Source of the DNA: Selaginella moellendorffii
Lineage: Eukaryota > Plantae > Lycopodiophyta
Direction of reading: 5' to 3'
Length of the DNA stretch: 64,000 nt
Assembly (NCBI RefSeq): GCF_000143415.4
Contig: NW_003314266.1
Coordinates: forward strand, 2,684,414 to 2,748,413
Below are positions 50,327-52,686 of the stretch, piece after piece. Position 1 is the first letter of the stretch, and each line of letters begins with the position of its first letter. The notes below the pieces were generated by a model. It saw nothing but the letters and a program-made list of their open reading frames with translations, was not told where the DNA came from and ran no database searches. A program made the position numbers and the translations under genes.

Positions 50327-52686
50327 ATGATGGCGCTAGTACCGGCGCACGATCACCTCAAATGGGAGGGGAGCCGGCATTTCACCACGACGCTAGCCGA
50401 GATAGGTGCGTTCCTTGATCCATCGCCTCCAGATTCGGGATTACCGCTCGTTTTTTCGTGCCAGGATCGTCGTGCGAGGAGATCAAGTTCAGTGGATGGG
50501 TGGAGAAGATCAACAGCAAAGGCTACGTCCAGCCGCGGGTGCTTGTCATCACGGATTTGGCCCTCTACAACTTCCGGGGAGGCTTTTTCACGCAGTGCAA
50601 GAGAAGGATCGATATGAGGGTCATCGATTCCATTGTCCGGAGCAAGTATAGCCAGCAGTTCATCCTATGCTGCCCAGAGGTGTGGGGTTTTCATTGCTAG
50701 CAAAAGATTGTATGAATCGTTTTCTTTCGTGTCTGTGGCAGGAATATGACTATCATTACTCGAGCTCTCGTGTGTCCGAGATTTGCGATACCCTCGTCGC
50801 TGTTTATCGAGTGGTGACTGGAAAAACACTGGCTGTGGATTTAAAGGTGACCGATCACTTGTTTTTGCTCAGCTGTCAAAACGTTGGAATCAGCAGACAA
50901 ATAAGAACTTATTTCCTTACGTTGCGACAAGGAAAGACTCAAAGACAGGATTGAAGGTACCAGCCTCTGCCTGTTTGTCTTCGGCATGTCTTAAGTTTAG
51001 CTTCCAGTCTAAACGGTATGCCTTGTCATCGAGGAAGCTTGGTGAATGGGACACGGTAAGCAGTCTAGTCTTGGACTTGTCTCATCAAGGTTGCTGCTCC
51101 AGAGATTTAGCGTCGAACAGTCAGACGACTGGCAAGTGGAGCCAAGAAGTCGATCCGAAACTGTAAGTTCATAAAATAGTCCTTTCTTTGCTAAAGAATT
51201 CGTGCCGAACAGGTTTACTCGACAGACAACGAAGAAGTGAGTCCTCAGAGTTTTAAGTTTTTGAAGGTCCTCGGGAAAGGAGCTTTTGGAAAAGTAAGGC
51301 GTTGATCTTCATTTGCGACGGCTTGGCGAGAAATTGCTTCGTCCTGCAGGTGTACTTGGTAAAGAAGCACACTACAGATGAAATCCTTGCGATGAAAGTG
51401 CTTGACAAGAAGGATCTTGTAGACGGCAAAGCCCTGGAGCATACCAGAACTGAACGCCATATTCTTGAGGTATGGCAGCTTCTCACATTTCGAACTGCTA
51501 AAACTTGTTGTTTCACAGGCCGTTCAGCACCCCTTCATTGTGTCTCTACGTTATGCTTTTCAAACCGAGGAGAAGTTCTACATGGTGATGGAGTTTCTCA
51601 GTGGGGGTGAGCTTTTTTATCACCTCAAGGTAAAACATTAAACTTTTTCGGTTTTCTCGGCTCTCGCTCAAGCCTCTCCACAGGTTGCAAGCCGATTCAA
51701 GGAGGATCGCTCTCGATTTTATGCGTCCGAGATCACATTAGCAATCGGTCATTTGCACGGGCTGGGAATTGTTTACAGGTACTGATTTTCTACTATTTTC
51801 TTGTGCCTGATTCGTTTCTGTACTATGCCACGCAGAGATCTGAAAGCGGAGAACGTTCTTCTCGATGCCGAAGGTATTTGCACTTAAATCACGTTCATGA
51901 AAGCTTACAGAGAAAACAACATTGCAGGCCATGTTAAACTTACTGACTTCGGACTCGCTAAGAAGGCCATTCTAGATAACAAGTCAGCGTCGACGTTTTG
52001 TGGCACTCCTGAGTATATCGGTGCGTGTTTTATAACCTGTGATTAGCTCTTGACACTAACGGTGCCACCCCAAGCGCGTCTTCAGCCCCAGAAATCCTCT
52101 GCAATTCAGGCCATGGTCGAGCTGCAGACTGGTGGAGCCTTGGAACACTGTTATACGAAATGTTGTGCGGGCTGGTAAGTTCATTCTAGATGCTCCATTT
52201 CATTCGAAGTTTTAATCCGGAAAATACAGCCTCCTTTCTATCATAAGAACGTGAACATCATGTACGATAGGATTCTCAACGCCAAGCTGACGTTTCCTGC
52301 TTTTCTCACTCCCGTGGCCCGAGACCTTCTCTCCAAGGTAACGCAAACGATCGATCACTTGGAACTCACTATCTGTTGCTAGCAGTTGCTCGTGAGAAAT
52401 CCTGAGAAGCGGCTGGGAGCTGGACAGAGGGACTATGAAGAGATTATAGAGCACCAGTTCTTCGCATCAGTGAATTGGACAAGCATGCTACAGAAGAAAA
52501 TCCGGCCGCCCTTCGTTCCACAAGTGAAGGTATGATGGCTGTATACAAGTTGACCACTGCTGACAGCCCGATAGTTTCCATCTTGGACAGGGAGGCGATG
52601 ATGTTGGAAACTTTGACGTGGTATTTACGTGCGAACAAATCACAACTACAGTGTGGTATGCTGATCAGTTTATTCGAGAGCGCTGA
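50327..52686 (+). CDS. AGC Ser/Thr kinase (Akt/SGK/S6K-like) with an N-terminal myosin TH1 (PH-like) domain, multi-exon
   Basis: N-terminal [40 protein letters not shown]. Kinase [71 protein letters not shown]; tail PPFVPQV, NFD. Confidence 0.9.

What the first reader, a model, noticed from the sequence alone, without database searches (positions are those of the whole stretch)
50327..52686. Myosin-TH1 (PH-like) domain fused to an Akt/SGK-type kinase in a land plant
Seen: hand-spliced exons join in frame a domain with myosin-I TH1 hallmarks ([35 protein letters not shown]) to a complete AGC kinase with the PDK1-site loop STFCGTPEY. The tail keeps PPFVP and NFD, but I see no FxxF[S/T]F hydrophobic motif. 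Known: Akt couples a PH domain to this kind of kinase, TH1 adopts a lipid-binding PH-like fold, and angiosperm S6Ks lack such a domain. Inference: a membrane-lipid-recruited Akt analogue built from a different PH module, possibly an ancestral gene lost in seed plants.
Basis: partly seen in the sequence, partly recalled or inferred. Interest (0 to 1): 0.8.

Follow-up and report, generated by a model that had tools for sequence, protein, structure and literature searches.

The report
Lycophyte kinase with myosin-tail lipid domain
A spikemoss (Selaginella) gene, split into two fragments in the public annotation, makes a single protein that joins a myosin-I-type, probably membrane-lipid-binding domain to an S6K/SGK/Akt-like kinase; this design is common in algae and protists, uncharacterised, and found here in no other land-plant group except possibly a clubmoss.

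Summary
The window is Selaginella moellendorffii. A 17-exon gene on the + strand (CDS from 50327; 16 GT..AG introns of 47-65 nt) encodes 503 aa. The parts are an N-terminal Myosin_TH1 domain (Pfam E 2.4e-15), a ~60-aa linker, and a catalytically complete AGC kinase with the loop STFCGTPEY. One 2355-nt RNA contig carries all 16 splice joints in frame, and raw RNA reads support five of them. GenBank/RefSeq splits the gene into a 168-aa TH1 model and a 176-aa kinase model.

The fusion is old. TH1+Pkinase+Pkinase_C filled the top of two database searches, with named members in Chloropicon, Chlorokybus, Hondaea, Cafeteria and Palpitomonas. The best named match is Chloropicon (50% identity, collinear, E 4.5e-176). 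Two rare motifs are shared only with the subgroup holding both named green-lineage members.

The TH1 model is PH-like (pLDDT 93; Myo1c tail TM 0.71) and keeps the two basic residues needed for PIP2 binding in Myo1c. For relatives, the nearest solved kinase is S6K1, then SGK1, then Akt/RSK. 147 of 157 relatives keep the hydrophobic motif; Selaginella lacks it. A full AGC tree with plant S6Ks could not be built. The scan noted the same reading on another piece of this genome.

The parts
50192..50326 (+). 5' untranslated region as far as the RNA contig reaches; it holds no upstream ATG
   Evidence: The X1 contig starts at 50192. No ATG lies in 50192-50326.
50327..50846 (+). Exons 1-3 (50327-50405, 50465-50679, 50742-50846) encode the Myosin_TH1 / PH-like domain, residues 1-133
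   Evidence: Pfam Myosin_TH1 E 1.9e-10 on exon 2 alone and E 2.4e-15 on P0001. AlphaFold2 pLDDT 93.2. Foldseek matches the Myo1c tail 4R8G_E at TM 0.71 and the CARMIL PH domain. The joints are in RNA.
50506..50538 (+). Codons K41 (50506-08) to R51 (50536-38), the strand-loop-strand basic signature [13 protein letters not shown]
   Evidence: K41 and R51 are invariant in 61 aligned TH1 domains. They align with VVK...RPR of the Myo1c tail 4R8G_E. K892A and R903A in Myo1c abolish PIP2 binding (PMC3771945).
50897..51162 (+). Exons 4-6 (50897-50956, 51008-51055, 51103-51162) encode the linker, residues 134-189, which is basic and Ser-rich with no domain hit
   Evidence: The joints are in the X1 contig. 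There is no Pfam hit. The linker does not align among relatives.
51213..52529 (+). Exons 7-15 encode the AGC kinase domain and the start of the C-tail, residues 190-482. Key residues are the G-loop GKGAFGK (210-216), K232, E251, YRD with D326, DFG with D344, activation-loop T360 in [12 protein letters not shown] (369-371) and PPFVP (475)
   Evidence: Direct reading. Pkinase hits on single exons. Scores of 409-434 bits to green-type TH1 kinases. Joints are in RNA, four of them also in raw reads.
52591..52655 (+). Exon 16 encodes the C-tail [21 protein letters not shown] with the NFDxxFT tether, and ends before any hydrophobic motif
   Evidence: Pkinase_C E 0.0024. The hydrophobic motif is present in 147 of 157 relatives and absent here.
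52656..52709 (+). Intron 16 (GT..AG). Its removal creates the stop TGA from 52654-55 plus 52710. If it is retained, the ORF runs to the TGA at 52684-86 (tail [10 protein letters not shown])
   Evidence: The record pieces of the X1 contig jump from about 52655 to 52709/10.
52710..52900 (+). 3' untranslated region. It overlaps the 3' end of the convergent LOB-domain gene on the - strand
   Evidence: The X1 contig continues past 52900. RNA reads of the opposite orientation cover 52638-52900. The LOB ORF is at 52894-53544 on the - strand.

Best explanation
The locus is one Selaginella moellendorffii gene for a 503-aa serine/threonine kinase. It belongs to an old, widespread and so far uncharacterised eukaryotic family, called TH1-AGC kinases here.

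Shown:
- The N-terminal 133 residues are a myosin-I-type TH1 domain with a confidently predicted PH-like fold.
- This domain keeps the two basic residues that in Myo1c are required for PI(4,5)P2 binding.
- After a ~60-residue linker comes an AGC catalytic domain with every catalytic residue and a PDK1-type activation-loop threonine (T360).
- One spliced mRNA carries both halves.
- Among the relatives retrieved, only the subgroup that holds the two named green-lineage members (Chloropicon, Chlorokybus) shares two rare motifs with it.

Inferred:
- The TH1 domain takes the kinase to acidic or phosphoinositide-rich membranes.
- There PDK1, which is itself lipid-bound, phosphorylates T360.
- This is an Akt-like logic built from a different PH-type module, with a kinase domain about equally close to S6K, SGK and Akt.

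The Selaginella protein has lost the C-terminal hydrophobic motif that nearly all relatives keep. It therefore cannot use motif-dependent docking of PDK1 or TOR-type motif phosphorylation, and membrane co-localisation would be its main control. In land plants the gene looks like a vertically inherited relic, kept in lycophytes and missing or unannotated elsewhere.
For: - Gene model and in-frame ORF.
- All 16 joints lie in one RNA contig, and five are in raw stranded reads.
- TH1: Pfam hits above cut-off. AlphaFold2 pLDDT 93.2. Foldseek top hits are the CARMIL PH domain, the Myo1c tail (TM 0.71) and the ARAP3/Akt3 PH domains. A family profile finds only the Myo1c tail in the PDB (E 4.6e-7), with K41/R51 on the K892/R903 signature.
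- Family: the best 120 hits of a profile search all carry PF06017+PF00069, nearly all also PF00433. Chlorokybus has a member. The full-length Selaginella protein aligns collinearly with Chloropicon P0273 (residues 9-497, 50% identity, E 4.5e-176).
- Green-lineage affinity: EYDYHY occurs in 16 of 157 relatives and ERHIL in 15 of 157, only in the Chloropicon/Chlorokybus subgroup apart from one EYDYHY outlier. Selaginella has both.
- Tree: Selaginella is excluded at 100/99 support from the 19-row clade that holds the named stramenopiles Hondaea and Cafeteria.
- Not contamination: it sits on a 994-kb Selaginella scaffold between plant genes (LOB, PIGA-type glycosyltransferase) and has Selaginella-sized introns.
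- Constraint: 5 of 7 coding differences between two alleles are synonymous, and the other 2 are conservative.
- Older than Selaginella: Diphasiastrum has a TH1 exon that is 45% identical by tblastn and ends at the same place.
Against: - No lipid binding, localisation or kinase activity has been measured.
- The Selaginella row is the longest branch in both trees (0.91 and 1.46). Its place among Chlorokybus, Palpitomonas and the Chloropicon-like clade is unresolved.
- The loss of the hydrophobic motif, low read depth (5 and 11 reads in about 12% of two RNA runs) and a kinase-less paralog would also fit a gene on the way to decay.
- The kinase domain is only a little closer to green-type TH1 kinases (59-63%) than to animal S6Ks (51-55%).
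- No plant S6K, Akt, SGK or PKA sequence could be put in the tree.
- The link across exons 3-7 rests on assembled contigs, not on single raw reads.
- Absence from other land plants rests on word-filtered searches with length limits. These would miss split gene models like Selaginella's own.
Confidence: 0.72

Rival explanations
1. There are two separate genes, as in the public annotation: a small TH1-only protein (168 aa) and a kinase fragment. The fusion would then be an artefact of transcript assembly across neighbouring genes.
For: GenBank/RefSeq calls a 168-aa TH1 gene and a 176-aa Pkinase gene. The bridging exons 3-7 are supported by contigs only. The same X1 contig also runs on into the convergent LOB gene, so it is not a pure single transcript. 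The 168-aa model equals retention of intron 3, which might exist as a minor isoform.
Against: The 168-aa model ends in read-through of a 50-nt GT..AG intron that the RNA contig removes. All 16 joints are GT..AG on the + strand and keep one ORF of 503 aa with no stop. The resulting protein is collinear over residues 9-497 with Chloropicon's single-gene TH1 kinase. The 176-aa model lacks the N-lobe of the kinase and cannot be a complete protein.
Confidence: 0.04
2. The gene is a recent, lineage-specific construct. A plant S6K-type kinase would have picked up a TH1 exon block in lycophytes, or the whole gene would have come by horizontal transfer from an alga or protist. In either case it is not a vertically inherited relic.
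For: The kinase domain is 51-55% identical to animal S6Ks, not far below the 59-63% to green-type TH1 kinases. The distribution in the green lineage is very patchy: Chloropicon, Chlorokybus and lycophytes only. The placement in the tree is unresolved. Plant S6Ks were not available for a test.
Against: Both halves and their spacing match the algal TH1 kinases in one collinear alignment. One rare motif in the TH1 domain (EYDYHY) and one in the kinase domain (ERHIL) are both shared with the same Chloropicon/Chlorokybus subgroup. The activation segment is GTPEYIAPE, as in 153 of 157 TH1 kinases, not GT[IT]EYMAPE as in the S6K references. The gene has 16 host-type introns, a paralog with the same intron positions, and a Diphasiastrum exon ending at the same position. 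Any transfer would therefore predate the split of the lycophyte orders.
Confidence: 0.12
3. The gene is a decaying relic with no remaining kinase signalling role. It is still transcribed, but it is losing parts (the hydrophobic motif is already gone) as its paralog lost the whole kinase.
For: The hydrophobic motif is lost, whereas 147 of 157 relatives keep it. It is the longest branch in both trees. Read depth is low. The paralog LOC9642432 is TH1-only.
Against: The 503-codon ORF is intact across 16 introns. Every catalytic residue and T360 are kept. The allele differences are 5 synonymous and 2 conservative. The invariant TH1 residues are kept.
Confidence: 0.12

Closest known systems
TH1-AGC kinases of algae and protists (unnamed family; e.g. 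Chloropicon primus 'protein kinase' P0273, Chlorokybus Chrsp49S00481 P0050, Hondaea fermentalgiana 'Protein kinase, putative' P0170; auto-annotated by JGI as 'serum/glucocorticoid-regulated kinase 2')
   Same: It has the same order and spacing of Myosin_TH1, linker, Pkinase and Pkinase_C. Identity to Chloropicon is 50% over the full length. It shares the invariant TH1 residues, the TFCGTPEY loop, the NFDxxFT tether, and the EYDYHY and ERHIL motifs of the green-type subgroup.
   Different: The Selaginella protein stops about 30 residues early and lacks the F-x-G-F-[ST]-[YF] hydrophobic motif. It is the most divergent row in the trees. Its gene has 16 introns and is split in the public annotation. 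I found no experimental paper on any member of the family.
Akt/PKB (PH domain + AGC kinase)
   Same: An N-terminal PH-fold module with a basic lipid-binding signature is followed by a linker and an AGC kinase with a T-F-C-G-T-P-E-Y activation loop. The Akt3 PH domain is among the Foldseek matches. PDK1 activates Akt without needing PIF-pocket docking (title of Biondi et al. 2001, as listed in PMC4143559). That would suit a kinase without a hydrophobic motif.
   Different: The module is Myosin_TH1 (PF06017), not the canonical PH domain. Akt kinase domains score below S6K1 and SGK1 for the relatives. Akt keeps a hydrophobic motif. Autoinhibition by the lipid module is not shown here.
p70 S6 kinase (S6K1) and SGK1
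   Same: These are the nearest solved kinase domains for the relatives: S6K1 344-362 bits and SGK1 334-348 bits. Identity to animal S6K domains is 51-55%.
   Different: S6Ks have no lipid-binding domain. The S6K references carry GT[IT]EYMAPE, where Selaginella and the family have GTPEY[IL]APE. Three animal S6K references fall outside all TH1 kinases in the tree. Plant S6Ks were not tested.
Myosin-I tail TH1 domain (Myo1c, PDB 4R8G)
   Same: It is the only PDB sequence found by the family profile (E 4.6e-7). The structural match has TM 0.71 over 131 columns. The K...R signature, needed for PIP2 binding in Myo1c, is conserved.
   Different: Here there is no motor domain and there are no IQ motifs. 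The domain lies at the N-terminus of a kinase. Sequence identity is about 20%.

Membership tests
Myosin_TH1 domain (Pfam PF06017) | Profile match above the curated cut-off | tested here: met
   57.1 bits, E 2.4e-15 on P0001 (identical to residues 1-134); 41.1 bits on exon 2 alone; cut-off 31.1.
Myosin_TH1 domain (Pfam PF06017) | PH-like fold resembling a solved myosin-I tail | tested here: met
   AlphaFold2 pLDDT 93.2, pTM 0.87. Foldseek 4R8G_E TMq 0.71, probability 1.00, plus many PH domains.
Myosin_TH1 domain (Pfam PF06017) | Basic signature residues of the first strand-loop-strand (Myo1c K892 and R903) | tested here: met
   K41 and R51 are invariant in 61 sequences and align to VVK...RPR of 4R8G_E. 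Their role in Myo1c is described in PMC3771945. Lipid binding itself was not tested.
Myosin_TH1 domain (Pfam PF06017) | Location in the tail of a class I myosin | tested here: not met
   There is no myosin head. The domain starts at residue ~9 of a kinase.
AGC protein kinases | Complete catalytic core (G-loop, VAIK Lys, alpha-C Glu, HRD/YRD Asp, DFG, APE) | tested here: met
   GKGAFGK 210-216, K232, E251, D326, N331, D344, APE 369-371. Pkinase hits on single exons.
AGC protein kinases | PDK1-type activation-loop threonine in T-F-C-G-T-x-x-Y | tested here: met
   S359-T360-F-C-G-T-P-E-Y. Phosphorylation was not tested.
AGC protein kinases | C-terminal tail with the NFD / FDxxF tether (Pkinase_C) | tested here: inconclusive
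   NFDVVFT is present, but Pkinase_C scores 19.0 bits against a cut-off of 20.9 because the tail is cut short.
AGC protein kinases | Hydrophobic motif F-x-x-F/Y-[S/T/D/E]-F/Y at the C-terminus | tested here: not met
   It is absent from both C-terminal forms and from all + frames of 52530-53100. It is present in 147 of 157 relatives.
TH1-AGC kinase family (unnamed) | Collinear TH1 - linker - Pkinase - Pkinase_C in one protein | tested here: met
   A single HSP covers residues 9-497 against Chloropicon P0273, E 4.5e-176. The family architecture is seen.
TH1-AGC kinase family (unnamed) | Both halves closest to family members rather than to other proteins | tested here: inconclusive
   Kinase: 409-434 bits to green-type members against 334-354 to animal S6Ks. 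TH1: after the Selaginella paralog, the best single-domain matches to the full TH1 domain include Chloropicon and Chlorokybus (87 and 82 bits).
Akt/PKB | Canonical PH domain (PF00169) at the N-terminus | tested here: not met
   The only Pfam hit in residues 1-134 is Myosin_TH1.
Akt/PKB | Kinase domain orthologous to Akt | tested here: inconclusive
   For relatives P0060 and P0273, Akt chains score 306 and 341 bits, below S6K1 (344 and 362) and SGK1 (334 and 348). No tree with Akt was possible.
Ribosomal S6 kinases (p70 type, including plant S6K) | Kinase domain nested within S6Ks | tested here: inconclusive
   Three animal S6K references form a clade outside all TH1 kinases (100/100). The activation segment differs from these references. 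Plant S6Ks were not tested.

The most novel reading that the evidence does not exclude
TH1-AGC kinases would be an ancient, eukaryote-wide, lipid-recruited branch of the S6K/SGK/Akt group. This would be a phosphoinositide-to-AGC signalling arm that the green lineage once had and that lycophytes still keep. The textbook statement that plants have PDK1 and S6K but no Akt-like target would then not hold for all land plants. The Selaginella form, lacking the hydrophobic motif, would be activated purely by meeting PDK1 on the membrane.
Probability: 0.25. Interest if true: 0.75.

Novelty: new variant of a known kind. Interest (0 to 1): 0.55.

Why it matters
Plant signalling reviews state that, of PDK1's two classic targets, only S6K is conserved in Arabidopsis and Ostreococcus (PMC4143559). 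Here a vascular plant carries and transcribes a kinase of the same S6K/SGK/Akt group with its own PH-like, probably lipid-binding module.

The design is common in marine and other protists and in two green algae. I found no paper on it in five full-text searches. In Selaginella it is hidden by a split gene model.

If the TH1 domain does bind phosphoinositides, several things follow:
- The family offers a natural second solution to membrane recruitment of an AGC kinase.
- It gives a handle on how lipid-to-kinase signalling was lost on the way to seed plants.
- It gives a test case for PDK1 activation without hydrophobic-motif docking.

At the least, the Selaginella annotation needs correcting: LOC112341010 should be merged with the neighbouring kinase fragment, and probably likewise LOC112344728 on the other haplotype, whose TH1 model ends in the same intron read-through (kinase half not examined).

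Tried and rejected
1. Two-gene reading: rejected by the spliced RNA contig and the continuous ORF.

2. Contamination: rejected by the scaffold context and intron sizes.

3. A hydrophobic motif in a further exon or another frame: none in 52530-53100, and the convergent LOB gene leaves no room.

4. Land-plant relatives:
- A region search with the TH1 domain of the Selaginella paralog P0002 found only itself.
- A profile of Chlorokybus, Chloropicon and the Selaginella exons listed no other streptophyte among 120 hits.
- Ten more cluster look-ups of the best TH1 fragments gave only unnamed environmental sequences.

5. Diphasiastrum: only the TH1 exon lies within +/-10 kb and no kinase exon was seen. 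Introns there may be long, so this is inconclusive.

6. Selaginella paralog LOC9642432: there are no AGC exons downstream. The kinase on the opposite strand is unrelated (30% identity).

7. ESM Atlas feature search of a relative's kinase part, leaving out TH1 clusters: it returned generic PKA-like clusters without usable ids, so it did not help classification.

8. A full AGC phylogeny: not possible. No tool call still available could return plant S6K, Akt, SGK or PKA sequences, and I did not type sequences from memory. The only references were animal S6K-like and one fungal protein that came up by chance.

9. The spliced 503-aa protein could not be handed to Pfam, the PDB search or AlphaFold as a whole, because it exists only as pieces by reference. 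Whole-protein work was done locally or on P0001:1-134.

10. Literature: five full-text searches and three papers read turned up no description of a TH1-kinase fusion.
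Full report
WHAT IS THERE

The window is Selaginella moellendorffii. A protein identical to the first 134 residues of my model is XP_024516129.1 (LOC112341010) on scaffold GL377639.1.

Reading 50200-52800 in three frames and joining at GT..AG sites gave a 17-exon gene on the + strand. The coding pieces are:
- 50327-50405
- 50465-50679
- 50742-50846
- 50897-50956
- 51008-51055
- 51103-51162
- 51213-51293
- 51350-51469
- 51519-51629
- 51684-51778
- 51836-51873
- 51928-52020
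- 52086-52174
- 52230-52337
- 52386-52529
- 52591-52655
- 52710, the last base of the stop codon

The 16 introns are 47-65 nt long and all GT..AG. The ORF is 503 codons without a stop.

TRANSCRIPT EVIDENCE

I laid four public runs on 50100-52900. One contig of run X1 (2355 nt, depth 29) starts at 50192 and carries all 16 joints, so the TH1 exons and the kinase exons are on one assembled RNA.

Raw reads of two RNA-Seq runs (X9, X10) support five joints: 50405|50465, 51778|51836, 51873|51928, 52020|52086 and 52337|52386. Their first mate lies on the - strand, as expected for a + strand mRNA in the usual stranded library. Depth is low, at 5 and 11 reads in about 12% of each run.

- The last intron (52656-52709) is removed in the RNA, and the stop TGA is made from 52654-55 plus 52710. 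The protein therefore ends ...[15 protein letters not shown]. The TGA at 52684-86 applies only if that intron is kept.
- The exon 4/5 joint is printed 6 nt to the left of the GT..AG cut, inside a near-repeat. Its length (51 nt) and the frame agree with my model, but two residues there are uncertain.

The same X1 contig runs on beyond 52900 into the convergent LOB gene, so the 3' end of the mRNA is not defined.

Between the window's allele and the X1 contig there are seven coding differences. Five are synonymous and two are conservative (L116F, V240I).

PUBLIC ANNOTATION

The GenBank assembly has two partial gene calls here: a 168-aa TH1 product and a 176-aa Pkinase product. The 168-aa product ends in read-through of intron 3. 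The fusion is therefore not recorded for this plant. The other haplotype's RefSeq model (XP_024525820.1, 202 aa) ends in the same intron-3 read-through. The scan's first stage noted the same reading on another piece of this genome (s1-355727); I did not look at that DNA.

THE TH1 HALF

- Exon 2 alone hits Pfam Myosin_TH1 at E 1.9e-10. Residues 1-134 hit at E 2.4e-15, 57 bits against a cut-off of 31.
- An AlphaFold2 model of residues 1-134, built with 60 relatives, has mean pLDDT 93.2. It shows the strand-rich core and C-terminal helix of a PH-like fold.
- Foldseek against the PDB gives the CARMIL PH domain, the Myo1c tail 4R8G_E (TM 0.71 over 131 columns), and the ARAP3, TAPP1 and Akt3 PH domains.
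- A profile of the 61 TH1 domains finds one PDB sequence only, the Myo1c tail (E 4.6e-7). In that alignment the family's invariant K41 and R51 sit on the VVK...RPR signature. Counting from K892 (my own counting), this signature is K892 and R903. K892A or R903A abolishes PIP2 binding and membrane targeting of Myo1c (PMC3771945).

Lipid binding by the Selaginella domain is thus a reasonable inference, not a result.

THE KINASE HALF

All catalytic residues are present: G-loop 210-216, K232, E251, D326, N331, D344 and APE 369-371. The activation loop reads S-T360-F-C-G-T-P-E-Y. The tail keeps PPFVP and NFDVVFT but ends 15 residues later. No hydrophobic motif occurs in either C-terminal form or in any + frame up to 53100.

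A FAMILY, NOT A ONE-OFF

An exhaustive HMMER search with exon 2 against 1.84 billion representative proteins gave 173 hits at E<=0.001. Local phmmer with my kinase part showed that many of them carry the same kinase after the TH1 domain.

A profile of seven such proteins returned 120 listed hits, all with PF06017+PF00069 and nearly all with PF00433. Named members are Hondaea fermentalgiana, Palpitomonas, Cafeteria and Chloropicon primus. JGI labels many as 'serum/glucocorticoid-regulated kinase 2'. Chlorokybus atmophyticus has one (P0050). Two members lie as intron-less genes on long eukaryotic contigs from metagenomes.

The best named match of the full Selaginella protein is Chloropicon P0273: 521 bits by phmmer, and one collinear BLASTP alignment of residues 9-497 at 50% identity, E 4.5e-176.

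The missing motif is therefore a derived trait of the Selaginella gene.

WHERE IT BELONGS IN THE FAMILY

- In a kinase-only tree (54 rows) and a full-length tree (37 rows, careful search), Selaginella is the longest branch.
- It is excluded with 100/99 support from the 19-row clade that holds Hondaea and Cafeteria.
- It sits in an unresolved group with Chlorokybus, Palpitomonas and the Chloropicon-like clade.
- Two rare motifs decide more clearly. EYDYHY in the TH1 domain occurs in 16 of 157 relatives, while 132 have EYDYR. ERHIL in helix C occurs in 15 of 157. Apart from one EYDYHY outlier (P0217), both occur only in the Chloropicon/Chlorokybus subgroup, and Selaginella has both.
- A Diphasiastrum complanatum gene model (108 aa) has a TH1 exon that is 45% identical to the Selaginella protein by tblastn (50% in the phmmer match to exon 2) and ends at the same position. 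The gene is therefore at least as old as the lycophytes. No kinase exon lies within 10 kb there, which is inconclusive.

This fits vertical descent in the green lineage with many losses. An old transfer is not excluded.

WHICH KINASE TYPE

For two relatives, the nearest solved kinase domains score as follows:

| Solved kinase | Bits (P0060, P0273) |
|---|---|
| p70 S6K1 | 344 and 362 |
| SGK1 | 334 and 348 |
| RSK2 (N-terminal domain) | not among the 60 listed; 342 |
| Akt | 306 and 341 |
| PKA | 309-312 and 331 |

For P0060, PKC beta (314 bits) also scores above Akt and PKA.

The Selaginella kinase domain shows these identities:

| Compared with | Identity |
|---|---|
| Chloropicon-like TH1 kinases | 59-63% |
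| TH1 kinases P0058 and P0060 (from the clade holding the named stramenopiles) | 53% |
| Animal S6K domains | 51-55% |

Three animal S6K references fall outside all TH1 kinases in the tree. They carry GT[IT]EYMAPE where the family has GTPEY[LI]APE.

The kinase therefore belongs to the S6K/SGK/Akt/RSK group and cannot be called Akt-type. What speaks against it is the collinear match of both halves to the algal proteins and the ERHIL motif inside the kinase domain.

DISTRIBUTION IN LAND PLANTS

- A profile of Chlorokybus, Chloropicon and the Selaginella exons listed no other streptophyte among its 120 best hits, all of them at 590 bits or more.
- A TH1 search with the Selaginella paralog found only itself.
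- Records labelled Hordeum vulgare and Hirondellea gigas fall among unnamed environmental sequences in the tree and are probably contaminants.

These searches use a word filter and a length window (288-917 aa). Split models like Selaginella's own 168-aa and 176-aa fragments would be missed. Absence from bryophytes, ferns and seed plants is therefore likely but not proven.

HOW IT MOST LIKELY WORKS

Shown: the architecture, the fold prediction, the conserved signature residues, the intact catalytic core, and one mRNA.

Inferred:
- The TH1 domain binds acidic or phosphoinositide lipids and brings the kinase to a membrane.
- PDK1 phosphorylates T360 there.

S6K and SGK need their hydrophobic motif to dock on PDK1, whereas PKB/Akt does not (title of Biondi et al. 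2001, as listed in PMC4143559). A TH1 kinase without the motif would therefore have to rely on co-localisation, as Akt does. From memory, not tested: the residues that form the PIF pocket (K236, L239, V240, R252 by position) look intact. The empty pocket could then accept a motif from another protein, as in PDK1.

LITERATURE

Five full-text searches and three papers read (the Ostreococcus kinome, a plant AGC review and a pan-eukaryotic myosin survey) gave no description of a TH1-kinase fusion.

VERDICT

The gene is real, transcribed and mis-annotated. The Akt-analogue reading holds as an architecture-based hypothesis, with three changes:
- The kinase is S6K/SGK/Akt-group, not Akt-type.
- The design is an old and widespread but unstudied family.
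- The Selaginella member is a divergent, motif-less relic.

Interest is moderate to fairly high.

Noticed in passing
L005:8799-9291 (Selaginella scaffold GL377587.1; proteins P0002, P0156): Selaginella has a second TH1 gene (LOC9642432, 'TH1 domain-containing protein' D8RR04). It is 64% identical to exon 2 and has introns at the same positions. No AGC kinase exons follow. Its protein holds a short stretch (LKVFKVIDELYVMKNKKTGETFALKPVE) that looks like the remnant of the first kinase strands without the glycine loop. It is possibly a duplicate that lost the kinase.
   Followed up: partly
window:52638-52900, both strands: The 3' end of the TH1-kinase mRNA and the 3' end of the convergent LOB-domain gene (ORF 52894-53544 on the - strand, 216 aa with a poly-Q N-terminus) overlap by at least ~200 nt. 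Reads of both orientations cover the stretch, and one assembled contig runs through both genes.
   Followed up: no
L004:10189-10440 (Diphasiastrum complanatum CM055105.1; protein P0004): A 108-aa gene model holds one TH1 exon that is 45% identical (tblastn) to the Selaginella protein, and it ends by reading into the intron at the same exon boundary. No kinase exon lies within 10 kb. It may be a second lycophyte TH1 kinase with long introns and a truncated model.
   Followed up: partly
proteins P0197 (UniRef, Hordeum vulgare) and P0200 (UniRef, Hirondellea gigas): These TH1 kinases are filed under barley and a deep-sea amphipod. In the tree they cluster among unnamed metatranscriptome sequences, not with the green-type subgroup. 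They are probably protist contamination in those data sets.
   Followed up: partly
proteins P0003, P0005, P0007, P0009, P0010, P0023: The closest TH1 matches after the Selaginella paralog are protist proteins with two to four tandem TH1 domains. Some follow a myosin head (P0009), while others have no motor in the predicted product.
   Followed up: no
protein P0143 (879 aa): An N-terminal TH1 domain is followed by a kinase domain only distantly related to the AGC type (68 bits). This suggests TH1 has been joined to kinases more than once.
   Followed up: no
window:50225-50326 compared with protein P0151: The other haplotype's RefSeq model starts 34 codons upstream at an in-frame ATG (MGSKALLAIGV...). 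The window has TTG at that place (LGAIALLAIGV), so the two alleles may differ in their N-terminus.
   Followed up: no
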